Shown one piece after another: positions 2,226 through 54,892 of a stretch of DNA of 64,000 bases; position 1 is the first letter of the stretch; every line of letters starts with the position of its first letter. The stretch covers positions 2,666,001 to 2,730,000 of the forward strand of contig CATNEN010000003.1 in NCBI GenBank assembly GCA_950097015.1, written 5' to 3'. Below the pieces are notes generated by a model. It had not been told where the DNA came from. It saw only the letters and a program-made list of their open reading frames with translations, and did no database searches. This DNA is from Macrostomum hystrix. Lineage: Eukaryota > Animalia > Platyhelminthes. The position numbers and the translations under genes are program-made.

Positions 2226-2440
2226 GAAATCCACAGGGCCGAGTTCTGATGTACATTGATGTACATCTGGGCAGAGAATCACAGGGCCGAGTCATTCCTA
2301 CCCTGATGTACATTGGTGTAGGGGCAGAGAATCACAGGGCCGAGTCATTCCTACCCTGATGTACATTGGTGTAAGGGCAGATAATCACAGGGCCGAGAAC
2401 TGATTTACACTGGTGTAGGGGTAATAGAATGACAGGGCTG
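2226..2440. repeat. Short degenerate ~53-bp tandem repeat (CACAGGGCCGAGTCATTCCTACCCTGATGTACATTGGTGTA...)
   Basis: About 4 imperfect copies visible directly. Confidence 0.75.
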
Positions 2441-4722
2441 AGTGCTTCCTCTATGTAAATTTCGAGTAGCAAATCACAGAAATGCAGCAGACAAACAAGA
2501 ACTATACTTTTTAATGGAAATCGCGCAGAACAAACGAGCAATTTTTGTTTCATTTTTAATATGTTTTAGCGTCCAGCTAGTTGCGCAAGTTGTTATATTT
2601 CAGCTAAAGTTTCACTTGCCCTCGTCATGCCAGGTTGACATCGGAACGATTTTGAGAGTTTAGATTTTCTAAGCGAAAGAATTCTCGGGTCTTGACAAAC
2701 TCTTCCGGCGGACAGACGCGACAAATGAGTTACAGAAGGAAAAAACAATTGCGCTTAGACGCTACTACTGCAATTAGTGCTAGTGGGAATACGACTACAA
2801 CACACTGGCCGCGGCACAAGACACCAAAGAGAATCGCGCTTTGCCTTTGTGTTTGAGTAGCTTTGAGTAGAGAGAGAGAGACAGGTGGGAGTACAAAGTT
2901 ACCGAGCGAGTGGGCAGGGAGACTAGGTGGGGCAGACAAGCATAGACACGCGCACAAAACCTCAGTAGGATTGGAAGGACAGTTGGATGACACAAACAAA
3001 AAAGCGTCAATTGGGAGATTGTTCAGGATTGCGCAAAAAATCCGAACTCAGAGAGTCAATTCAAGTCAGACGCTTGGATGCCAAGTACGCGTTGAATCTT
3101 AAAACCGATCAAACAAAATAAGCAAGGAAAAAATAGCTAAAGTAAAATAGAGCCAAAAATTCACGGTGAGGGCGGTAGAAGAAAGTCCTCAGGTGCGAAG
3201 CAACCAGCCCGAGCAGACTGAATATTTCGGGGAGGAAAGCAAACGACTCGATTTTGGTGGAGACATAGAAAGCAAAAAAGCAATTACAGCACACACTATT
3301 TGGTGTTGAAGTGTTTCAACAGAAAATGTGCCTAAAAAGTTCTGGTAGAAATCTACAAAAAGGGAGTAGTTTTTCCTGACAAAGTGAGGCGAATTGCGCA
3401 AAAAAGAGAAAAAAAACATTTTGCGAGCACATCTGTGTCACCTAGGTTTTTCAGACCTAACTAATGCTTGTAATTTTACACAAAAGACAGAGACTGGTGA
3501 GACGGCAAAGTACTGGGGTTTGTGGAGTTGCACAACACAAGCAATTTAGTTTTTCTGTGTCTAGAGTACAGGTGTATGTACAGAAAAAAAGGGGATCTAC
3601 TATGTTTTGTTTCTTGAACCGAAGAGAATGAAGGAACGGGTGCTGAAAAAGCAAACAGACACGCACAGAGGAGGTGGCGTGAAGGAGCAAAGGGATGCGC
3701 CTGGAATTAGTTCTGCATGGCCTTATCTAAGCTTGATGTACGCTGGGCTGTGTTTCTCGCTGTCGTCACTCTGCGCGCACTGGGGGTAAGAGATTAAACA
3801 CCCACCCCACTACGCTGGGACAGAGTTAACTGCGGACGAAATCTCATAGTCTAAATGTACATTGGAAACTGACTTTACTGACTAAACTGACAGTGAAACT
3901 CTCACCCTGAGTGTACATTACTAGATATCGAGCCCAAACCAATCACGTCCTACCGTCTTAGGCTGAAAATTTTCACGAAGCAGAAAAAATTAATTTAAAA
4001 ACCAAAGAAAGTAGCTACAAGACGGCAAAGAAAGCCCCAAAAAACTGGGACCTATGAGGAATACGAAAACAAAAAGAGGCAGAAAACGCAAGGAAATTTT
4101 ATATAGAAGCCAACGGGAGAGCGAGTGAAAAAAGGCTATGCAAAAAAATTTCTCGTCAGATGCGACCCGAGAGCTGGGATGTTAGAAGAGGGCGAAGCAA
4201 GACAAAAAGAACCATTTTGATCACCATCGAGCAAAAAAGCGACAAAAATTGCAAAAGGAATTTGAACAATGATTTCCGATTCAGAAAAGCAACACGAAAA
4301 AACGAGCGGCGAATAAAAAACACAATTAAAAGATAAAATCACCCAATGGCAGAAAAATTCTCAAAGCAGCAACAAATCCTATGCGTAGTAACTACTCAGT
4401 ACGACATTTGATTCCGTAAAAATGATTTTTAATGTATATAACTTAATGCAAATTTTCACTAGATTTTCTTCAATAAGACTGAAAGCAGTGGGGAACAGGA
4501 AAGTAAATTAGCCTAACTATCGACAACTGCCCAAAAACAACCCACGAGGAGAAGTAAAGCTCGCAGCAATGTTCCAATAGTTAAAAAAGCAAGCTTAAAA
4601 AATTGCATGTTTTATTCCAGGAATTCAGCTATTTAGGAAACAAAAAAAACTAGCTTTCGCAATTCGAATCTCCGCTCTAACAGTGACTTAACTATGAATT
4701 TTGAGTGTGCCCACAAGTATGC

Positions 4723-7700
4723 TCACTGCTGCTCAGCGGCAGCCAGTCCCAGCTGGTGATAGGCGGCGGCGGCGGCGGCAGCGGGGTCGATGCCATAATA
4801 GAGCGACCCGTCTGTTGTGTACAGGGCCGCATTGGCGGCGGAGGTCATTAGGTGCGGCGCCGCGGCGTACATGCCAGACATCTGATAGGCTGACGGGTCC
4901 AGCTGAGTTCAGCGGTGACGGATTTTGATTTAGCAATGGGATTTGTTAAGCCTGGAGCACACCTAATAAGAAGCTATAATCTTACCTGGTAGATGGACGG
5001 TCCCTGAGCCACTGAGGCTTGACCTGGAGCGGTGGCAGCCGAGTGCAGCAGTTGGTAGCCAGCTGGAATGGCGGCTCCGGGAGGCGCCGGTGGCCCAGCG
5101 GAGGCTCTGGTGGCAGCGGCGGCGGCAGCGGCGGCAGCGGCCGAATATAGCGAGGCCTGGCTGTACAGGTGATGATGATGCCCGGCCTGAAGCTGCTGCT
5201 GCTGCTGCTGTTGCTGAGCCTGAGGCTGCTGAGCCTGAAGAATTTGATGAGCTGTCGGAGCGGCGTAGCCACGAGCTGCAGCCAGGGCCGCGGCGGCAGC
5301 GGCAGCAGCGGCAGCCGAATTCTGCTGCTGCTGCTGGTGATGATGCAGCAGGGCCATTGAGGCCAACTGGTGAGCGGCTGAAGATGGCGGAGCTTGCATC
5401 GCCGGCTGACCGGCGGCTGCTGCGGCAGCGGCTGCGGCAGCGGCGGCAGCTGCAGCCATCTGCTGATGTTGATGCACCTGATGCACCTGCACCTGTTGCT
5501 GCTGCTGCTGCTGCTGCTGGCGCTGTTTCTTGCGCTGATTGGTTTTGTCAGCCAATTTGGCCTCCAACGGTCTGGCGGTGCCGAGTTTCTGGCCGAGCGC
5601 CACGCCGGTCTTGTTGATGTGCGAGATGGCCAGAATGGCATCCTGAGGTTAAGCAATATTGGTTTTAGGTAGTCAGCTGACTAGGCTAGGGGTTGTTATA
5701 GGCTTGAACCTGAAGGTCGGGGGTTCGACTCCAGACTTCACTGGAACAATTTGTGTCTTTTAGCAAGACACTTATTGCACCCAGCTGTCAGTTCACCCAC
5801 AGTGGACTGAACAGTTGTACACAGCTTTTGGAAGCGCTGAGACTGTGAAACTGACCCCAACCGGGCCAGAGTCCGTTTAATCCGTCAATCCGTCCGTCAA
5901 TCCGTCCGTCAATCCGTCAATCTACGTCTTGTACAAGAATAGTCACAATTTCAGCACGGACAGACAGCAGCCTCACCTGTTCCTTCTCGAATCGGATGAA
6001 GCCAGCTCCAGTAGCTCCAGTCTGCTGTCTGGTACCCGGATCCGTAGCCCGCATCACCCGGCAGGAGATGATGCGGCCACTGATCAGCTTGCTGAGCTCC
6101 TCGGTGAAGACGCGTGTCATCCAGTCCTCATTGCACTCAGCTCTGGTTGGCAGGTTCTTGATGTAGATGTTTGTGGGGTCCTTCTCGGATTCCTGCGGGT
6201 CACGGGTGCTGCTTGTTATAAGCACCTGAACATCCTGAAGGATTATAGATAAGAGCCTGAACATCCTGAATAATAGAGCCTGAACATCCTGAAGGATCAT
6301 CTAGATAAGAGCCTGAACATCCTGAAGGATCATCTAGATAAGAGCCTGAACATCCTGAAGGATCATCTAGATAAGAGCCTGAACATCCTGAATAATAGAG
6401 CCTGAACATCCTGAAGGATTATAGATAAGAGCCTGAACATCCTGAAGGATCATAGATAAGAGCCTGAACATCCTGAAGGATAATAGATAAGAGCCTGAAC
6501 ATTCTGAAGGATCATAGATAAGAGCCTGAACATCCTGAAGGATCATAGATAAGAGCCTGAACATCCTGAAGGATCATAGATAAGAGCCTGAACATCCTGA
6601 AGGATCATAGATAAGAGCCTGAACATCCTGAAGGATCATAAATAAGAGCCTGAACATCCTAAAGGATCATAGATAAGAGCCTGAACATCCTGAAGGATCA
6701 TAGATAAGAGCCTGAACATCCTGAAGGATCATAGATAAGAGCCTGAACATCCTGAAGGATCATAGATAAGAGCCTGAACATCCTGAAGGATCATCGAAAT
6801 AAGAGCCTGAACATCCTGAAGGATCATAGATAAGAGCCTGAACATCCTGAAGGATCATCTAGATAAGAACCTGAACATCCTGAATAATAGAGCCTGAAGA
6901 TCCTGAAGGATAATAGATAAAAGCCTGAACATCCTGAAGGATAATAGATAAGAGCCTGAACATCCTGAAGGATCATAGATAAGAGCCTGAACATCCTGAA
7001 TAATAGAGCCTGAACATCCTGAAGGATCATCTAGATAAGAGCCTGAACATCCTGAATAATAGAGCCTGAACATCCTGAAGGATCATAGATAAGAGCCTGA
7101 ACATCCTGAAGGATTATAGATAAGAGCCTGAAGATCCTGAATAATAGAGCCTGAACATCCTGAAGGATCATAGATAAGAGCCTGAACATCCTGAAGGATC
7201 ATAGATAAGAGCCTGAACATCCTGAAGGATCATCTAGATAAGAGCCTGAACATCCTGAAGGATCATAGATAAGAGCCTGAACATCCTGAAGGATCATTTA
7301 GATAAGAGCCTGAACATCCTGAAGGATCATAGATAAGAGCCTGAACATCCTGAAGGATCATAGATAAGAGCCTGAAGATCCTGAAGGATAATAGATAAGA
7401 GCCTGAACATCCTGAAGGATCATAGATAAGAGCCTGAACATCCTGAAGGATCATAGATAAGAGCCTGAAGATCCTGAAGGATCATAGATAAGAGCCTGAA
7501 CATCCTGAAGGATCATAGATAAGAGCCTGAACATCCTGAAGGATCATAGATAAGAGCCTGAACATCCTGAAGGATCATAGATAAGAGCCTGAACATCCTG
7601 AAGGATTATAGATAAGAGCCTGAACATCCTGAAGGATCATAGATAAGACTCTGAAAATGGTGATAGAATGAATTGTCAACAAGTGTCATTGCAATTAAAA

Positions 7701-46384: not shown

Positions 46385-47663
46385 CTGGCAAAATTTATTT
46401 AATCAAAGAGCCATTGTAGCTGCTTCCATTTTTAATAAAGCCGAATTTCCAATGGCCAATAATATTTTAGAGGCTGAATATCCACTTACTCTTTAAGAAA
46501 GCTTGAATTTTATAATTAAGATTTCAGCATAAGTACATGTTATTGAAAAATGATTATTCTAATCAAACTTTGTATCTATATTACTGAGTTGAGTTGGCTA
46601 TTTTAGAGAAGTTATAACGAGCAAAACGTAATTATTTGTGCACCAGTGGAGCTTGAATGTATTCGTAAATACAATACAGTCTTCTTGTGTCTCTTCGAAA
46701 GTCTCGAGTGACCAATGAAGTCCGGCCATAACTGTTTTCGTAGAATTCTAGTTCGATCTTCTTTCGAAAGTGGCACTAATTGAAAAGAAAAATAAATGAA
46801 AAAGAGCGTGCAAACTACTTTAAGTAGGATAGCGAACGCCTGCGTTTATCACGTTTATTTTTGGGCTGTAGGAAAGAAAATTCTGTTTAGATAGCTTTTT
46901 TCGAATAACATTGCTTTATACTCGTATTCCGCAAACAGGAAACTGACTACTATAACTTTATTTTTACTGACTATAACTCAAGGTTACACAAACAGAATAT
47001 TTGTTTAAATTGAGCCTAAAACCCCTAAAAGCATTGTTTAGCAATTTTGTTCCGACTACCTTTGTCTCTACGGAGTAAAGGCAAAAAGCAAGAGAAGACT
47101 ACTGAATAAACGGCAAAAAAAGAAGCAACCAAACTGAGGTTTTGTCAAGGTTGACGATATTGAAAGTTACGCTTGATTCCGCTCAAATTAAACCCCGACT
47201 GCGATTAGATTCTTTGCTTTTTACGTTTTAGAAACGTACGATAAATTGTCGACGAGTAATTTTTAACAGAAGACACTACAATTGCACTTAAGTGAAAATT
47301 GACTCGAAAGCTTGATTGGCTGGACTTAAGTCACGTGCTCAGTTTTGGGAGGGTGGGCTACTGTGGGAAACCCAGCAGCGCTTCTAAAAATAGCTACATG
47401 TTTACGCTTTAAAAGCCAGCAGCTCTCTGTCGTATTGAAAATGAATTCCAAAACATAAAATAATGGGCTATTTTACTTCTAAGGACAAAGCGACATGCCG
47501 ATTAACAATTGAAACTAAAAAATTGAATTATTACCTACTGGTACTAGTTAAAATATACGAGAATTACAAGAAAGAATTTTGTTTTCGCGTTGAAAATTTT
47601 TGAAGCTTTGTCGGTGCATCATCACCCCCATCAATGATTGACATCCCAGAAAAAGCTGATTGA

Positions 47664-50292
47664 TCAATGATGTTCCCCACCGTCGGCGTCTTCGCCAGCG
47701 TCCTGCTCGGAGGTCCAAAGCTGCAGGATATTTGTTTGGTTTGACGATGCAACTTTATAGAACAAGCGCCATACAATACGAGTATAATACAGAAACACAA
47801 AGAACTCGATAAAATCTCAAAAAGACAGCTACACATGTCTCATCTCTCCCTTATCTAATCTCTCCCGCATCTCATCTCTCCTGTATCTCATCCCTCCCGT
47901 GTCTCATCTCTCCCGTGTCTTATCTCTCCCGTATCTAATCTCTCCAGCGTCTCATCTCTCCCGTATCTAATCTCTCCAGCGTCTCATCCCTCCCGTGTCT
48001 CATCCCTCCCGTGTCTCATCTCTCCCGTATCTCATCTCTCCCGTGTTTCATCCCTCCCGTGTTTCATCTCTCCCGTGTCTCACCTCTCCCGTATCTAATC
48101 TCTCTCGCGTCTCATCTCTCCCGTATCTAATCTCTCTCGCGTCTCATCTCTCCCGTATCTAATCTCTCCAGCGTCTCATCTCTCCCGTATCTCATCCCTC
48201 CCGTGTCTCATCCCTCCCGTGTTTCATCTCTCCCGTGTCTCACCTCTCCTGTATCTAATATCTCTCGCGTCTCATCTCTCCCGCATCTCAACTCTCCCGT
48301 GTCTAATTACTCGTGTCTAATCTCTCCCGCATCTCATCTCTCCCGTATCTAATCTCTCCCGCATCTCAACTCTCCCGCATCTCAACTCTCCCGTTTCTAA
48401 TTACTCGTGTCTCATCTCTCCCGTATCTAATCTCTCCAGCGTCTCATCTCTCCCGTATCTAATCTCTCCAGCGTCTCATCTCTCCCGTGTCTCACCTCTA
48501 CCGTGTCTCATACCCTCCCGTGTCTCATCACTCCCGTGTCTCACCCCTACCGTGTCTCATCTCTCCCGTATCTAATCTCTCCAGCGTCTCATCTCTCCCG
48601 TTTCTCACCTCTACCGTGTCTCATCCCTCCCGTGTCTCATCTCTCCCGTTTCTCACCTCTCTTCCGTGTCTCATCTCTCCCTGTGTCCCACCTCATGTCT
48701 CGTCTCATATGTGTCTCATCACTTACGAATCTCATCTCATATTCGTGTCTCATCTCATACGTGTCTTCCCTTATCTTTCTCCTGTCTCATCTCTCCTGTC
48801 TCATCTCTCCTGTCTCATCTCTCCAGCTTTTGCAACTCTGGCACTGACCGTGAGGTTGTCTCGCAGCAGTTGCATAATCAGTGTGCTATCCTTGTAGGAG
48901 TCCTCGGGCAGGTTGTCCAACTCGGCGATGGCCTCATCGAAGGCTTTCTTAGCCAGCTGGCATGCCTGGTCTGGTTCGCTGCGAATCTCGTAGTAGAAAA
49001 CTGAGAAGTTCAGAGCCAGGCCGAGTCTGATTGGGTGGGTAGTTGGCAGCTTCTCCTCGGCGCTCTTGGTGGCCGCTTTGTAGGCCTCCATGCTCTTGTC
49101 TACAACGTCCGTGCGGTGCTCGCCCACTGCCACCTTTGCGTGGGATCAATGTCAGTTGGACATTAGAAAATAAATGCAAGGACTTATAGGGATGAAGGTG
49201 AAGGATGAAGTGAAGGTAGACAGATGAAGGGAGAATTGTGGATAGAGAAGGATGTAGGGGGAGAAGGATGGGGAGAAAGATGGGGTAGAAGGGTGGAGGA
49301 GAAGGATGGGGGAGAAGGATGGGGGAGAAATATGGAGGGAGAAGGATGGGGGAGAAGGATGGGGGAGAATGATTGGGGGAGAAGGATGGGGGAATCGATG
49401 GAGGGAGAAGGATGGGGGAATCGATGGAGGGAGAAGGATGGGGGAATCAATGTAGGGAGAAGGATGGGGGAATCGATGGGGGGAAGGATGGGGGGATGGG
49501 GGGATCGATGGGGGGAAGGATGGGGGGATGGGGGGATCGATGGAGGGAGAAGGATGGGGGAATCGATGGAGGGAGAAGGATGGGGAATCGATGGAGGGAG
49601 AAGGATGGGGGAATCGATGGAGGGAGAAGGATGGGGGAATCAATGTAGGGAGAAGGATGGGGGAATCGATGGGGGGAAGGATGGGGGGATGGGGGGATCG
49701 ATGGAGGGAGAAGGATGGGGGAATCGATGGAGGGAGAAGGATGGGGAATCGATGGAGGGAGAAGGATGGGGGAATCAATGTAGGGAGAAGGATGGGGGAA
49801 TCGATGGGGGGAAGGATGGGGGGATCGATGGAGGGAGAAGGATGGGGGAATCGATGGAGGGAGAAGGATGGGGGAATCGATGGAGGGAGAAGGAATTTGG
49901 AGAGAGTTGGAGGGAGAAGGAGGGAGGGAGATGGATGGAGGGAGAAGGATGGAAGAAGACTGGAGGGAGGAGGACAATGGGAGAAAAAGGAGTTATGAGG
50001 ATAAAGAGAGGGATGGAGGAAGAAGGATGAAGGGAGAAGAGAGGGAAATGGATTAAGGGAGGAGGATAACGGTAGTAAAGCATGAAAGGGAGACAGTGGA
50101 AGGCAGGGGAGCGTTAAGGCTGGAGGACGAATGATATTACATTTCAGGCTATCAGACAGCCTGTTAGTGCAGGTGATTTTATCGCAGCCTTACCTCAGCC
50201 AGGTACCTATAGTAATCTCCTTTCATTTTCAAGTAGAACACGCGACTTTCGGACAGCGTGGCCTTGTTGATCAGGTGATCGTCCAGCAGATC
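47664..50292 (-). CDS. 14-3-3 (YWHAZ-like): 14-3-3 distal C-terminal cassette B (three exons, no N-terminal exon of its own; predicted to splice from exon 53412-53077)
   Basis: Exons 50292-50194 ([33 protein letters not shown]), 49133-48849 (VAVGEH...[18 protein letters not shown]...LLRDNLT) and 47720-47664 ([18 protein letters not shown]). Canonical splice sites, all phase 0, no disabling lesions. Confidence 0.9.
47835..48825. repeat. 16-bp minisatellite (TCTCATCTCTCCCGTR) filling the last intron of 14-3-3 cassette B
   Basis: Degenerate tandem array. Confidence 0.92.
49215..50050. repeat. G-rich ~26-bp minisatellite (GGGAGAAGGATGGGGGAATCGATGGA) filling the first intron of 14-3-3 cassette B
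   Basis: Tandem array with G4-prone G-runs on the + strand. Confidence 0.92.
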
Positions 50293-51600
50293 CTGCATTA
50301 TTTGGCAGTTTTTTGGTTATCCCCAATGAGCGGAATAATTTAGATGTTTAATCGCTGTCAGGTAGAATTATTTTATATGGACCCTACTAAAAGCAGTATC
50401 GCAAGTAAAATAAACAGGTAAATAATTGTTAAAACATTCTTTTGCAGAATAGGAGTGTCAAATGTTTTTAAAGTGTTAGTTCGCCTTATGCCCAAAATAG
50501 GTAAATCGAAACTAAGGTAAGCAATTAATTCTAGATGACTAATTAAGAATTGCGAAGTTCGAGTCTCAATCAATATATTTCAGCTAGTGAGTGATCTTTT
50601 ATTTGATTAAATTGCGGATGTTACCATTTGTGGCTAGTTAATTTCTCTTATTTGAATTTTTAATTAAATTTCATGCCATGCTGTTTGCAGACCATAATGG
50701 CTTGCGTTGTTTCTGCGGCGTGCAATCCTAACTCATTAGCATGCACTAAGTGAAAACCGACATGCCGCTATAGTGACCGGAAAATAAAGTGAAAGCAAGC
50801 CAGAGAAGCAGAGTTTAAATTCTACTTTTCGAAGGATGCGCTTCGAATTTGGATTTAAGAAACACTTGTCTTATTAAGCTCAAAAAGCCAATAAAGGTAG
50901 ACTGACCGCAAAAAACGACAAACACACTTAGAGCCGTCGTCAAATGATCAACTTATATAAATAATGATGTTGATTTTGTGATTAAACTTCAACTTTAAGA
51001 GCCTGTTTGAATGCAACTTTCAGTGGTGCCACATTAGACACAAAAATAGACGCTAGGGGCTTAATGCTACAACAAACAATTACTAGAAATGTAATATAAA
51101 AGACATTAAATTAAGCGAAACCAGTTTTCAATAGAATTAAATAGCGAATTTTTTCCTAAAGAAAACATTTTTAACGCAATTTCCTAGTGCGTCTGATAAT
51201 TTCACAACTCTATTAACAGTCTTATATTTACCGGTTTCTATTATAGGACTATTATCACTTAATTTTACAGGCCTTTTATAGCTGAAAAGAGCATCGAGAA
51301 ATCCTGTTCCGGTAGTTGACAGTCAGGTAATTTTTCACAGCTAAACTAGTTGGTACACAGTTGCTGGGGAAAAGCGCGGATAGGTTTTTGCTATACGAGA
51401 TCAGGCTCAGACTAGCCTGCAATGTGTGTTCCTTTCACTGTCACAGTCAAAATCTATAACGCTTTATGAATTAAGAGTAAGATAAAGATATATAGAGAGA
51501 ACAAACGCATATTTCAGTTGATAGTAATCGCAAGTGTAATATATAATATTAATTATTAATGTTGGGTAGAATAGGAGTCTGATTTGAATTCAGAGAAGGT

Positions 51601-53412
51601 TCAGTTGTCCTGCTGCTCTCCGTCCTCGCCGCCCTGCTCGGAGGTCCACAGCTGTAAATGTGGGAAAAGGGGTAATTCGTTTGTCATTTCTTGAAATCTT
51701 CTAGAAGAAATGTAACAGAATGCAGTCGGTGACGCGAGCAGGTCTACTCACCGTCAGATTGTCCCTCAGCAACTGCATGATTAGGGTGGAATCCTTGTAG
51801 GACTCCTCGGCTAGGTCGTCCAGGTCGGCAATTGCGTTGTCGAACGCCTGGCAGTGCGGATAAAAAACGATAAATTAGCTACTAGAGAAGGAAAATAAAA
51901 GTACATTAAAGTTCAAGACATCATCCAAATAAAAAACGCTTGCCTTCTTAGCCAGCTGGCAAGCCCTCTCCGGATCGTTCTTGATCTCGTAGAAGAACAC
52001 AGAATAGTTAAGGGCCAGGCCCAGTCGGATGGGATGGGTGGTAGCCAGCTCGGTCTCGGCGTGGTCAGTGGCGGACTTGTAGGCGCCCTCGGAGCTATCG
52101 ACGACATTCTTGCGCTCGTCGCCAGTGGCCACCTCAGCCAGGTATCGGAAATAGTCACCCTTCATCTTGTAGTAGAAAACCTTCGACTCCGAGTTGGGAG
52201 CGTTCTTAATTAGGAAGTCATCCAAAAGGCTCTAAAAATGTTAGTTTTCCAAAGGGCGTAACACAGCAAACGTTATTGTTGTCCAACATGCAGGATAGAA
52301 CATGCACAAAGCTAACATTCAACATTTTCATGCAGTACACTTGATTTCGAATCAATTGCATTTTGGGTGCATTTTGCAGTGCTTGACACTGCTTGATTGA
52401 TTGATGCTAATGATCAAAATGTGGATGACAGTAGGCAAGCAAGCAAGCAATAACTTTTTTATCTAATTTTAATATTCACCCATACCTACAGTACTAGACT
52501 TTAATTTATTAATAAATATAGTTAAGAGCTTCAATAATCAAGGTAGGCTTGGTCATTACATTTTGTAGATAAATGTAGATTTTATTTTACCAAATTGTTT
52601 GATCAGGCCTAGTCTTCTCTTTGTTTAATTTTTTTCCAGAATTATAAATAAATCAGAACTATCTAGACCTTGACATTTTAAGACAGGACTCGAAATGACT
52701 ATAACAAACAACTATAAATACAAAGAGTTAAGTTTGAACAGTCGAAGTTATGATGTGATAGAAAATGTTTATCATATATTATGATTACTATTATAATACT
52801 AATAGTCTAAAATAAAAAACAGAGTAGGCAAAAATATCCAATCTGAATCTTTTTTTTCTTTAATTTTATCTATCTCATTCTTTAAATAATTTACTACTTT
52901 AAAACGTTTCTTTTTAGCCAGGTAAGTAGCCAAAGCCTAGCACATATTTTGACAAAAATCTTATTACATTGATAAAGCTGTTTTCCCTAACGATGTATAA
53001 CAACCAGAATTGCGTACTGGAAGTTGCAATTAAGCAACAGTGGGAGTAAATTTGAATATCAAACGTACAAACTTACCAGGACCTCCTTGCAGATCTTCTG
53101 CAGCTCGCTCTCGATTTTCTGGCGGTACTCCTTCGCCATCGACTGCTTGCGCTCGCTACCCTCAGTCTTACTCTCAATGCTGGAAATCACACGCCACGAG
53201 GACCTCCTGGCACCAACCACGTTCTTGTAGGCAACAGACAGCAGATTTCTCTCCTCGTTACCCAGCTCCTGTCCCTTCTCAGTAACGGCCTTCATGGCGG
53301 TTGCCATATCGTCATAGCGCTCAGCCTGCTCTGCCAGCTTCGCGATATGAACCAGGTCCTCGCGACCAGAGATGTTGGAGGAAGTTAGCCAGCCAGACAT
53401 GGACGACGACAT
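51601..53412 (-). CDS. 14-3-3 (YWHAZ-like): 14-3-3 protein (zeta-like), isoform A = shared exon 1 + proximal cassette A
   Basis: Exons 53412-53077 ([33 protein letters not shown]...ICKEVL), 52231-51944 (GC donor), 51847-51752 ([16 protein letters not shown]) and 51651-51601 ([16 protein letters not shown]). Confidence 0.95.
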
Positions 53413-54892
53413 TTTGACTTAGATTAGTTAGCTACTTTGGGTAGAATACGTTGAAAGATTAGGAGTCAAGCTGAAGTTTTTTAATAGTGACAAGAGTGTT
53501 CAGAGCGAATAGCGTATTTAAGGCAACCTGAGTCACGTTTTGCCTTGAAGTAGGATAAAGTAGATCCTAAAAAATTCAACAGGTTCATTTAAGACTAAAT
53601 TTTATATAGCTAAAGAAGGAAGAGTTATTTTGCCTTCAGGAATAGAGTATTAACTAGTTTCAGTTGCAAAGGATAAAAAATATTCAACTTTTTAAATAAT
53701 ATAATTCAAGGTCGTTATTCTTGCACAAGAGCAAGAAGGTTTCTTTGAGTGTGGCTACAGCTTAAGAGTGTTGACTAAGCTAGTAGATAAAATTCGCATT
53801 TGAAATGCGCATTATCTACTTACAGTAAGGAGCAAAACATTTTATATCGTACATACCTGCAAACTGCAATAATGTACATTTTTTGTACAGTCAATATATG
53901 TACAATTGGGCACGCACAAAATATTTGACGTGTTTCATGATTTTTCTAGATGTCAATATTTATTAATTTTTATGCGATTTGCGAAGCTATACAAAAATGT
54001 ATGCTATAACTAACCACGCCCTTCCAGAACGTGCTGATGGAACACCTACAAGTAAAGTAACATTAGTATATTATGTTTGCGCTTATGTCCGTACATGTAT
54101 ATGTATACTCGCCCCGACGCCCGTACGTACATTTCTCTAGCTACCCTACGATTTCCAGCTATAAAAAATTTTGTACGTCAATACTTGTGATTATTATAGA
54201 TAAATTCTATCTCTTAGTATTACGAAATGTACACTCTTTAGTCTTCTGCTTGACAGGTAATAAGTACTGATGTTGTAGCCTGTTCAAATGTAAAAAGCAG
54301 TGATTTCTGTAGTACATGTGTATAAAATTTAGTAATTTGTAATCTCGCTACTTAGATAGCCAGCAAACAGTTATACATTTATTACGCACCGGAGTGGAGT
54401 ACTTTACTTTTAGCTGAAATTGCGCATTTTAATCTCTTAACAATAAATACACCTTATCAGCTGGTCTCATAGAAATCAAAAGAACTCCAATTTAAGCTTA
54501 TCTACAGAAAAATAGTTAAAATAGACTTTACTGTTTGCTCAGTTCTTGTGTCTCGTGTCTGTTATCAGTCACGCGTTGTTACGCTTTTGTCGGCGCAAAG
54601 GCTTGCTCTTCTTTTCTGAAGGAGGTCAACTTTCAGCCATTCTTTTCGTGGCCTTTCAGTAACACTGTATGTTAGCACACAAGTGAAGCCGAGGCAATTG
54701 GTAATCGCAATTGTGTTGACTTAAATTGCTTGGCTCATTGTGAAAGATCAGACATATTACTATTTTATGGCTTTGGCACTGCATGTACATGATGTACTTC
54801 AAATTGAAGCTTGTCTGTCAAACATACATAGAACAGGTTAGAAACAAAAATGACACCTACACAGCCTAGTTGAGCCAGGTTTAAAGCCAGCC

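What the first reader, a model, noticed from the sequence alone, without database searches (positions are those of the whole stretch)
47664..53412. One 14-3-3 N-terminal exon feeding two complete, mutually exclusive multi-exon C-terminal cassettes
Seen in the sequence: a single exon (53412-53077, 112 codons, ending ICKEVL|GT in phase 0) is followed by cassette A (52231-51601) and then cassette B (50292-47664). Each cassette encodes the remaining ~60% of the protein, with its own stop and 3' region. By hand count they differ at 35 of 134 aligned residues (~74% identity). Synonymous sites are heavily diverged, yet both are lesion-free and keep the RY and LLRDNL ligand-groove residues. No second N-terminal exon is visible in the 1.3 kb between them. 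A candidate minus-strand AATAAA lies at 50598-50603. Established: 14-3-3 dimerisation is mediated by the N-terminal helices, and Drosophila 14-3-3zeta has mutually exclusive single internal exons. Inference: this is an old partial gene duplication retained as an alternative splicing/polyadenylation switch. It would yield two paralogue-like 14-3-3s that share the exon-1-encoded dimer-interface region but differ in C-terminal client-binding half, tail and 3'UTR.
Basis: partly seen in the sequence, partly recalled or inferred. Interest (0 to 1): 0.85.

Follow-up and report, generated by a model that had tools for sequence, protein, structure and literature searches.

The report
Flatworm 14-3-3 gene, two alternative ends
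A Macrostomum flatworm 14-3-3 gene joins one shared first exon to either of two old, diverged copies of the rest of the protein, and transcript assemblies from two studies show both joins, so one gene makes two paralogue-like 14-3-3 proteins that current M. lignano gene models miss.

Summary
One 112-codon exon (53412-53077, minus strand) covers 14-3-3 Pfam positions 2-92. Two cassettes follow: A (52231-51601) and B (50292-47664). Each covers positions 93-220 and has its own stop and AATAAA. No other N-terminal exon lies in the 64 kb window. The other seven in the genome all sit at separate 14-3-3 loci.

Transcript contigs show E1->A1 in three runs and E1->B1 (53077->50292, GT..AG) in two runs from two studies. 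B is at roughly 5-20% of A's contig depth.

A and B share 99 of 134 residues. Synonymous sites are saturated and dN/dS is about 0.1. All groove residues are kept, and the differences sit in helix F, the loops and the tail.

The organism is a Macrostomum flatworm. M. lignano has the same layout, but its models show B as a 124-aa fragment or as a 367-aa A+B fusion.

In a tree, B falls outside the clade holding A and three further paralogous genes, so the split is old.

The mechanism is alternative terminal-cassette splicing coupled to alternative polyadenylation. That is a known kind, but I found no description of it for 14-3-3. An added trans-spliced form of B is not excluded.

The parts
53077..53412 (-). 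E1: the shared first coding exon. It has 112 codons, the ATG is at 53412, and it ends ICKEVL|GTAAGT. It encodes helices A-D, which hold the dimer interface and K49/R56 of the phosphate site. The 5'UTR runs on to about 53475.
   Evidence: PF00244 positions 2-92. Contigs reach 53462-53475.
52232..53076 (-). Intron removed when E1 is joined to A1 (845 nt, GT..AG).
   Evidence: The 52231/53077 joint is seen in X1, X2 and X7.
51944..52231 (-). A1: first exon of cassette A, 96 codons, followed by a GC donor.
   Evidence: PF00244 positions 93-188. The protein P0269 from a transcript assembly is identical to it.
51752..51847 (-). A2: 32 codons. The 96-nt GC-AG intron at 51848-51943 precedes it.
   Evidence: The 51845/51942 joint, which may shift by up to 4 nt, is seen in three runs.
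51601..51651 (-). A3: the coding part of A's last exon ([16 protein letters not shown], then stop).
   Evidence: The 51651/51752 joint is seen in three runs.
50560..51600 (-). 3'UTR of the A isoform, about 1.04 kb, with AATAAA at 50603-50598.
   Evidence: X7 contig 20 runs unbroken from 50560 to 51651.
50293..50559 (-). Spacer of about 270 nt between A's poly(A) site and the B1 acceptor. No transcript contig lies on 50382-50522.
   Evidence: Depth table.
50194..50292 (-). B1: first exon of cassette B, 33 codons. Its acceptor is joined to the E1 donor.
   Evidence: The 50291/53076 joint (CT..AC on the plus strand, so GT..AG on the minus strand) is seen in X1 and X7.
49134..50193 (-). First intron of B, filled with a minisatellite at 49257-49974.
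48849..49133 (-). B2: 95 codons, helices F-I.
   Evidence: PF00244 positions 128-220. It is 99% identical to M. lignano PAA66868.1.
47721..48848 (-). Second intron of B, filled with a 16-nt-unit minisatellite at 47836-48824.
47664..47720 (-). B3: the coding part of B's last exon ([18 protein letters not shown], then stop).
   Evidence: The M. lignano protein P0151 carries the same B2|B3 junction.
46827..47663 (-). Inferred 3'UTR of the B isoform, with AATAAA at 46859-46854.
   Evidence: The hexamer is. X7 contig 19 is 1310 nt, which equals 31 (E1) + 100 (B1) + 285 + 57 + 837. That puts its end near 46827.

Best explanation
This is one zeta-like 14-3-3 gene of a Macrostomum flatworm. It has a single promoter and a single first coding exon (E1, helices A-D), followed by two alternative 3'-terminal cassettes.

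The E1 donor is spliced to one of two acceptors. If it joins A1, 845 nt downstream, the transcript ends at A's own poly(A) site near 50560. If A1 is skipped and RNA polymerase reads through A's poly(A) site, the donor joins B1, 2784 nt downstream, and the transcript ends at B's poly(A) site near 46830.

The products are a 256-aa A isoform, which is the major one, and a 258-aa B isoform, which is the minor one. They share the dimerisation half and K49/R56. They differ at 35 positions in helices E-H and the loops, and also in the acidic tail and the 3'UTR.

Shown here: the exon structure, both junctions in RNA-derived contigs, selection on both cassettes, and the same layout in M. lignano.

Inferred: that B is translated, that A and B form homo- and heterodimers through the common E1 half, and that the choice is regulated by competition between the A1 acceptor plus A's poly(A) site and the B1 acceptor.
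For: - Exons, frames and splice sites.
- Complementary Pfam coverage by E1 and each cassette.
- Joints E1->A1 in X1, X2 and X7, and E1->B1 in X1 and X7 (two studies). Contig depths were 50.4 against 11.1 in X1, and 2273-3707 against 212 in X7.
- The E1 letters at the joint are unique to this locus.
- The B contigs pass straight from B1 into E1 and stop only where the A and B forms diverge.
- A's contig ends 38 nt after the AATAAA.
- A transcript-derived protein, P0269, equals E1+A1+A2+A3 exactly.
- dN/dS is 0.095 at saturated dS, and there are no lesions.
- All groove residues are identical, with differences in helix F (12 of 26), the loops and the tail.
- M. lignano keeps E1, A and B in the same order, with 1, 3 and 4 conservative changes.
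- No other E1-like exon lies in the window, and none in the genome is unaccounted for.
Against: - All runs were Logan contigs, not raw reads. Only 31 E1 letters lie on the E1 side of the E1->B1 joint, which is the tool's minimum. Depths are a poor measure of isoform ratio.
- The runs are labelled 'RNA?' by guess. Their RNA nature is inferred from exact intron removal.
They rest on the M. lignano protein P0151 and on contig length.
- X2 shows no B at all.
- No full-length E1+B protein is in the 5.8-billion-protein collection.
- There is no protein-level evidence for B.
- The M. lignano annotation treats B as a separate 124-aa gene.
Confidence: 0.78

Rival explanations
1. B is in effect a downstream gene of an operon-like unit. 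Its B1 acceptor mainly receives the spliced leader (SL) in trans. The SL ends in ATG, which is in frame with B1, so this would give a roughly 147-aa half 14-3-3 lacking helices A-D. On this reading the E1->B1 join is a by-product.
For: - The organism has the exact published 35-nt M. lignano SL, followed by GTAAG, in 18 copies. It also has a variant SL array (SL text from PMC8629364).
- In M. lignano, 30% of genes are trans-spliced and 15% lie in operons, with spacers of about 100 bp.
- Here A's poly(A) site and the B1 acceptor are only about 270 nt apart.
- GenBank models B as a stand-alone 124-aa protein.
Against: - In both runs that hold B, the B contig continues from B1 into E1 without a branch.
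- No loose end at 50292 is among those shown.
- A half 14-3-3 without helices A-D would lack K49/R56 and the dimer interface.
- Selection on B is as strong as on A.
Confidence: 0.1
2. B is a decaying remnant of a partial duplication, and the E1->B1 join is splicing and read-through noise with no function.
For: B is the minor form, and it is absent from run X2. Its introns are swollen with minisatellites. No annotated full-length B isoform exists.
Against: - The split is older than the radiation of four paralogous genes, yet B has no stop, no frameshift and no broken splice site.
- dN/dS is about 0.1.
- B's branch is shorter than the stem of the A-type clade.
- All ligand-groove residues are kept.
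- B is intact in M. lignano with four conservative changes.
Confidence: 0.07
3. B is an ordinary tandem paralogue whose own first exon is missing from the assembly or was overlooked, or the locus is misassembled.
For: Tandem 14-3-3 genes merged into one model are common in other animals.
Against: - Most of the 1.3 kb between A and B is A's 3'UTR, covered by a single contig.
- There is no E1-like exon elsewhere in the 64 kb window, and none in the 220-Mb genome is unassigned.
- The transcript joint uses this locus's E1.
- An independent M. lignano model has the same order of parts.
Confidence: 0.03

Closest known systems
Mutually exclusive exons of arthropod 14-3-3zeta (Drosophila leonardo; three alternative exons)
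   Same: It is the same protein family and follows the same logic. Tandem exon duplication yields isoforms that keep the N-terminal dimerisation half and vary the helix F-H region. Merged insect, tick and mite models with the duplicated ~54-aa exon appeared in my own search. The cluster of three exons and its docking/selector RNA pairing are described in PMC6071210.
   Different: In arthropods a single internal exon of about 54 aa is swapped, and shared exons follow it. Here the whole remaining ~60% of the protein is swapped as a multi-exon terminal unit of 146-147 codons. That unit has its own stop, 3'UTR and poly(A) site. The two units have different intron positions. I found no convincing docking/selector pairing.
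3' variable-region genes such as Drosophila PGRP-LC (one common 5' part spliced to alternative 3' cassettes, each encoding a homologous domain)
   Same: One upstream donor chooses among downstream homologous cassettes, and each cassette ends the transcript. This is the closest match in mechanism (PMC6191721).
   Different: In PGRP-LC each cassette is a whole domain attached to a common membrane anchor. Here the cut runs through the middle of a single compact domain, near the end of helix D. One half-domain therefore has to fit two partners.
Classical alternative last exon choice coupled to polyadenylation (calcitonin/CGRP, IgM secreted/membrane; from my own knowledge)
   Same: There is competition between an upstream acceptor with its poly(A) site and a downstream acceptor.
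   Different: In those cases the alternative ends are unrelated sequences, not diverged copies of the same protein half.
Existing M. lignano gene models (PAA66868.1 / PAA76752.1, 124 aa; UniRef A0A1I8IT57, 367 aa; A0A1I8II35, 256 aa)
   Same: They cover the same locus in a sister species. A0A1I8II35 is the E1+A isoform.
   Different: None of them joins E1 to B. B appears either as an N-terminally cut fragment starting at an internal Met, or fused behind A2 in an impossible double protein.

Membership tests
14-3-3 protein family (Pfam PF00244) | Domain match above the curated cut-off | tested here: met
   Every exon scores above the 33.2-bit cut-off: E1 119 bits, A1 148, A2 43, B1 49, B2 143.
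14-3-3 protein family (Pfam PF00244) | One complete nine-helix domain per product | tested here: met
   E1 covers profile positions 2-92. Each cassette covers 93-220 of 223. P0269 equals the spliced A product.
14-3-3 protein family (Pfam PF00244) | Phosphopeptide-binding residues (K49, R56, K120, R127, Y128, L172, N173, V176, E180, helix I LxxLLRDNL) | tested here: met
   K49 and R56 lie in E1 ([10 protein letters not shown]). The rest are identical in A and B. Numbering comes from the alignment to human zeta chains. The residue list is from my own knowledge.
14-3-3 protein family (Pfam PF00244) | Dimer formation through the N-terminal helices | not tested
   This is inferred from established 14-3-3 structures. 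No complex prediction was run, because the B product may not be joined.
Mutually exclusive internal exon cluster (arthropod 14-3-3zeta type) | The alternatives are single internal exons flanked on both sides by shared exons | tested here: not met
   Each alternative has three exons and carries its own stop and AATAAA. Nothing is shared downstream.
Mutually exclusive internal exon cluster (arthropod 14-3-3zeta type) | Docking/selector competing RNA pairings | tested here: inconclusive
   Only one weak inverted repeat turned up: 19 nt, 79% complementary, between the A1 acceptor and A's 3'UTR. No relatives' DNA was available to test conservation.
Alternative 3'-terminal cassettes / alternative last exons coupled to polyadenylation | One donor is joined to two alternative downstream acceptors in transcripts | tested here: met
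   Joints 53077->52231 and 53077->50292.
Alternative 3'-terminal cassettes / alternative last exons coupled to polyadenylation | Each alternative has its own stop codon and poly(A) site | tested here: met
   For A, the AATAAA at 50603-50598 is followed by a contig end at 50560. For B, the AATAAA at 46859-46854 fits the contig length, by inference only. No 3'-end sequencing was available.
SL-resolved operon (downstream gene trans-spliced) | Spliced leader joined to the downstream unit's first acceptor | tested here: inconclusive
   SL genes are present. No SL-bearing contig or loose end at 50292 is among those shown. However, contigs drop rare forms, and 10 loose ends were not listed.

The most novel reading that the evidence does not exclude
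The B1 acceptor may be used in two ways. In cis, the E1 donor would give a full-length B-type 14-3-3. In trans, the spliced leader would supply its terminal AUG, which is in frame with B1. That would give a free C-terminal half 14-3-3 (helices E-I) that can neither dimerise nor complete the phosphate pocket, so it could act as a decoy or regulator. One cassette would then yield both a whole and a half 14-3-3, depending on which donor wins.
Probability: 0.1. Interest if true: 0.75.

Novelty: new variant of a known kind. Interest (0 to 1): 0.55.

Why it matters
14-3-3 proteins are hub adaptors, and their isoform specificity is still poorly understood. Here nature has made a clean half-swap. The dimerisation half and half of the phosphate site are identical, and they are joined to two C-terminal halves that have been diverging for longer than four separate paralogous genes.

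This gives a direct way to ask which isoform-specific properties (client choice, tail autoinhibition, localisation through the 3'UTR) reside in helices E-I and the tail. It also raises the question of how one half-domain stays compatible with two partners.

The host genus includes M. lignano, a laboratory model with RNAi and transgenesis, so isoform-specific tests are practical.

The finding also corrects public M. lignano gene models, which show a 124-aa fragment and a 367-aa fusion. And it shows that alternative terminal cassettes can look like operon neighbours in trans-splicing animals.

Tried and rejected
- **Second N-terminal exon.** I searched for one by tblastn in the window and across the whole genome. 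There is none.

- **Second cassette at the paralogues.** None was found at C29, C38 or C33.

- **HMMER search with B2.** The search of 1.84 billion representatives was too coarse, because the library is clustered at 50% identity. It mainly returned merged tandem models.

- **Reaching full-length proteins from single exons.** The open frames are too short for the length window. I got round this by using the database protein P0266 with region 1-112. That found E1+A (P0269, P0388) but no E1+B protein.

- **M. lignano genomic DNA.** I could therefore not fetch the DNA, compute synonymous divergence of B between species, or test intron conservation.

- **Literature.** I found nothing on 14-3-3 alternative terminal cassettes, on Macrostomum 14-3-3, or on Mlig017350.

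- **Competing RNA pairings.** One weak inverted repeat only.

- **A1->B2 hybrid.** A loose end in X7 at 51945 continues with B2 sequence. I read this as the B contig cross-aligning over 20 letters that A1 and B2 share, not as a hybrid transcript.

- **A2->B1 join.** The 367-aa model implies it, but it is not among the joints.

- **Steps deliberately left out.** All comparisons were made exon by exon or with database protein ids. I left the B introns out of read laying because of their long tandem repeats.


Full report
**What is in the sequence**

On the minus strand, an ATG at 53412 opens a 112-codon exon, E1 (53412-53077). It ends ...ICKEVL|GTAAGT.

Two sets of exons lie downstream.
- Cassette A is A1 52231-51944 (96 codons), A2 51847-51752 (32 codons) and A3 51651-51601 (16 codons plus TGA).
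- Cassette B is B1 50292-50194 (33 codons), B2 49133-48849 (95 codons) and B3 47720-47664 (18 codons plus TGA).

All introns are phase 0 with AG acceptors. The donors are GT, except for the A1/A2 intron, which has a GC donor (GCAAGC).

Pfam's 14-3-3 model places E1 on profile positions 2-92. It places A1+A2 on 93-220, and B1+B2 on 93-125 plus 128-220. E1 therefore needs exactly one cassette to make a whole domain, and either cassette will do.

**Is there a hidden first exon for B?**

tblastn with E1 finds nothing else in the 64 kb window.

The whole assembly is 220 Mb in 42 contigs, and the window is C3:2666001-2730000. E1-like exons occur at eight loci.
- Four are zeta-like genes with the same E1|A1|A2|A3 plan: this one, C29, C38 and C33:3.43 Mb.
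- Four are epsilon-like genes with a short first exon and one large exon: C39, C33:1.87 Mb, C2 and C37.

Every N-terminal exon is accounted for by its own C-terminal part. Only this locus has a second cassette.

**Transcript evidence**

The look-up of sequencing runs returned ten small runs that hold 6-49% of the sampled words of 47600-53450. Their sizes (39-206 million letters, plus one of 434 million) are far below 1-2x coverage of a 220-Mb genome, so they must be enriched for transcripts.

I laid four of them (X1, X2, X7, X6) on 50100-54300. That stretch has no long tandem repeat and holds E1, all of A and B1.

The joints found were:
- 52231/53077 (E1->A1) in X1, X2 and X7.
- 51651/51752 (A2->A3) in the same three runs.
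- 51845/51942, with four ambiguous letters, in the same three runs. This is compatible with the GC-AG intron 51848-51943.
- 50291/53076, 'CT..AC (cut +1)', which is GT..AG on the minus strand and equals E1->B1. It is in X1 (study P1) and X7 (study P4).

Exact intron removal shows these runs are RNA-derived, even though their records do not say so.

The B contigs contain exactly 31 letters of E1. That is what a k=31 assembly leaves before the fork with the A form, and it is the tool's minimum for a bridging record. Those 31 letters match this E1 with no mismatch. The paralogues C29 and C38 match only 26 and 27 of 31.

Contig depths put B at about 5-9% of A in X7 (212 against 2273-3707) and about 20% in X1 (11 against 50). 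B is absent from X2. The tool warns that such depths are rough.

X7's A contig runs unbroken from A1 through A3 and on to 50560. That is 38 nt past the minus-strand AATAAA at 50603-50598. About 1.04 kb of the '1.3 kb between the cassettes' is therefore A's 3'UTR. No contig lies on 50382-50522.

X7's B contig is 1310 nt long. After 31 nt of E1 and 100 nt at B1, 1179 nt remain. That equals B2 (285) + B3 (57) + 837 nt, which places its end near 46827. This is just past another minus-strand AATAAA at 46859-46854. This last point is arithmetic only. I did not lay the B introns because of their minisatellites (47836-48824 and 49257-49974), and only one read-laying run was allowed.

**Organism and independent models**

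A search with B2 found a 124-aa GenBank protein of Macrostomum lignano that is 99% identical. It is PAA66868.1 / PAA76752.1, 'hypothetical protein BOX15_Mlig017350g2/g1'. It starts at the internal Met of B1 and carries the B1|B2 and B2|B3 junctions exactly as I drew them.

Its cluster also holds a 367-aa M. lignano model, UniRef A0A1I8IT57 (P0266). That model reads E1+A1+A2 and then B1+B2. It is an impossible double protein, but it shows that M. lignano has the same parts in the same order.

I then used P0266 residues 1-112 as the query.
- This found P0269, a 256-aa protein from a Logan transcript assembly that equals E1+A1+A2+A3 of this window residue for residue.
- It also found P0388, the M. 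lignano E1+A protein.
- It found no protein that joins E1 to B.

Compared with M. lignano, this genome differs at 1 of 112 residues in E1, 3 of 144 in A and 4 of 146 in B. All the changes are conservative.

The exact 35-nt M. lignano spliced leader followed by GTAAG occurs 18 times in this genome. The leader text is from PMC8629364. The genome is therefore a Macrostomum very close to M. lignano but not identical to the deposited proteins. Earlier notes of this scan on other parts of the genome reached the same genus.

**Age and selection**

Between A and B, synonymous sites are saturated (pS 0.72). dN is 0.229, so dN/dS is about 0.095.

I built a maximum-likelihood tree of the cassette region: 131 columns and 20 rows, with the epsilon-like genes as outgroup.
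- A, its M. lignano orthologue, the C29-, C38- and C33-type paralogues and three Logan relatives form a clade with 99/96 support.
- B (this genome plus M. lignano) lies outside that clade. It sits in an unresolved group with plain zeta-like 14-3-3s of other flatworms: P0276, P0156 and Protopolystoma P0304.
- B plus the A-type clade as one group has only 73/74 support.
- B's branch (0.16) is shorter than the stem of the A-type clade (0.27).

B keeps ancestral motifs ([28 protein letters not shown]). All A-type genes have changed these ([19 protein letters not shown]).

The intron positions also differ. B is split at E131|V132. A-type genes are split at K193|A194. Both share T226|L227.

So the A/B split predates the radiation of four paralogous genes, and B has evolved slowly throughout. 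That is not how a dead copy behaves.

The tree cannot tell how the layout arose. One possibility is a partial duplication of the 3' part. The other is a whole-gene tandem duplication followed by loss of the downstream first exon. P0276 is a full-length protein from another organism, with an E1-like N-terminus (83% identical) and a B-like C-terminus. It suggests that 'E1 plus a B-like end' is the older gene form.

**What differs between the products**

B2 aligns to human zeta residues 133-226, so each cassette starts at residue 99 (human zeta numbering), near the end of helix D. The helix limits I use are from my own knowledge of human zeta.

The 35 differences are distributed as follows:

| Region | Differences |
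|---|---|
| Helix F | 12 of 26 |
| D-E loop | 5 of 8 |
| G-H loop | 3 of 3 |
| H-I loop | 3 of 7 |
| Helix H | 4 of 18 |
| Helix E | 3 of 21 |
| Helix G | 2 of 17 |
| Helix I | 0 of 17 |

The remaining three differences are one each at residue 99 (end of helix D), in the E-F loop and in the F-G loop.

K120, R127, Y128, L172, N173, V176, E180, L216, I217, L220, D223 and N224 are identical in A and B. K49 and R56 lie in E1.

The acidic tails differ ([10 protein letters not shown] against [12 protein letters not shown]), and the 3'UTRs are unrelated.

The two isoforms should therefore bind phosphopeptides in the same groove and pair through the same interface. They present different outer surfaces and tails, which is the same region that arthropods vary with their alternative exon.

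**Mechanism**

Shown: one donor is joined to two acceptors. A has its own stop, poly(A) signal and transcript end.

Inferred: B's own transcript end. Also inferred is that making B requires skipping the A1 acceptor and reading through A's poly(A) site. That is the classical competition seen in alternative last exon choice.

I found no convincing long-range RNA pairing. The only hit is a 19-nt, 79% complementary repeat between the A1 acceptor and A's 3'UTR.

**Rivals**

Macrostomum trans-splices 30% of its genes and has operons with spacers of about 100 bp (PMC8629364). The B1 acceptor lies only about 270 nt after A's poly(A) site. The leader also ends in ATG, which would be in frame with B1. 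A spliced-leader form of B is therefore plausible in principle, and it may explain why M. lignano annotators split B off as a separate gene.

Against it as the main form, both B contigs run from B1 into E1 without a fork. A half protein would also lack K49/R56 and the dimer interface.

The pseudogene reading is contradicted by the selection and conservation data. The misassembly or missing-exon reading is contradicted by the transcript joint, by the continuous A 3'UTR contig and by the M. lignano model.

**Comparison with what is known**

The family is 14-3-3, with all tested features met.

The arthropod 14-3-3zeta cluster of three mutually exclusive internal exons (PMC6071210) is the nearest case within the family. 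However, its defining feature is internal exons with shared exons on both sides, and that is not met here.

In mechanism, the locus is a '3' variable region' or alternative-last-exon gene like Drosophila PGRP-LC (PMC6191721). One unusual point is that the cut passes through a single compact domain.

Searches of the paper library found no description of such a 14-3-3 gene, nor any study of 14-3-3 in Macrostomum. That library is incomplete.

**Limits**

- The evidence comes from contigs only.
- Only 31 letters lie on the E1 side of the joint.
All work on it was done exon by exon or through database protein ids.

**Verdict**

The locus is a new variant of a known kind of gene architecture. It is of moderate to good interest because it is a natural half-domain swap in a hub protein of a tractable model genus, and it corrects public gene models.

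Noticed in passing
G000 C39:12667884-12753120 (outside the window); exact copies on C1, C15, C17, C42: Besides 18 exact copies of the published M. lignano spliced leader, there is a tandem array with a period of about 927 bp and more than 60 copies. It carries a variant leader with 3 mismatches (...GACTCTCTTTTTTGCATG|GTAAG). This may be a second SL RNA class.
   Followed up: no
window 47836-48824 and 49257-49974: Both large introns of cassette B are almost wholly minisatellite. One has a 16-nt unit in about 62 copies. The other has a 13-nt unit (about 55 copies) nested in higher-order periods of 127-193 nt. Cassette A's introns are short (96 and 100 nt) and repeat-free.
   Followed up: partly
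window 51848-51943; L022 (C38) 4940-5296: The intron after AKK has a GC donor both in this gene (GCAAGC) and in paralogue C38 (GCTAGT). It has a GT donor in C29 and C33. Transcript joints confirm that the GC-AG intron here is spliced.
   Followed up: partly
window 51164-51182 and 52224-52242: A 19-nt inverted repeat, 79% complementary, could pair the A1 acceptor with A's 3'UTR. It is probably chance, but it sits where masking the A1 acceptor would favour B.
   Followed up: no
Protein P0001 (Mizuhopecten yessoensis OWF44887.1, 302 aa): This scallop gene model strings two 14-3-3 C-terminal cassettes together. The second begins exactly at the same exon boundary (GLLTDHL...) as cassettes A and B here. 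It could be a tandem gene pair merged by the predictor, or a similar two-cassette gene.
   Followed up: no
Proteins P0270 (Calicophoron daubneyi, 378 aa), P0267 (Actinostola), P0268 (Watersipora), P0271 (Mytilus): These over-long 14-3-3 models have two N-terminal matches. The fluke model repeats an identical E1-like segment twice before one C-terminal half. They are probably assembly or prediction artefacts, or tandem genes.
   Followed up: no
G000 C39:10302725-10305015 and C33:1870225-1871977: Two epsilon-like 14-3-3 genes are 98% identical in protein with dS of about 0.13. That is far younger than all other 14-3-3 pairs in this genome, so it is a recent segmental or genome duplication.
   Followed up: partly
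Run X6 (sediment metatranscriptome) on window 53214-53473: A 260-nt contig with a single mismatch to E1 and its 5'UTR occurs in an environmental sediment RNA library. This fits the sand-dwelling habit of Macrostomum.
   Followed up: no
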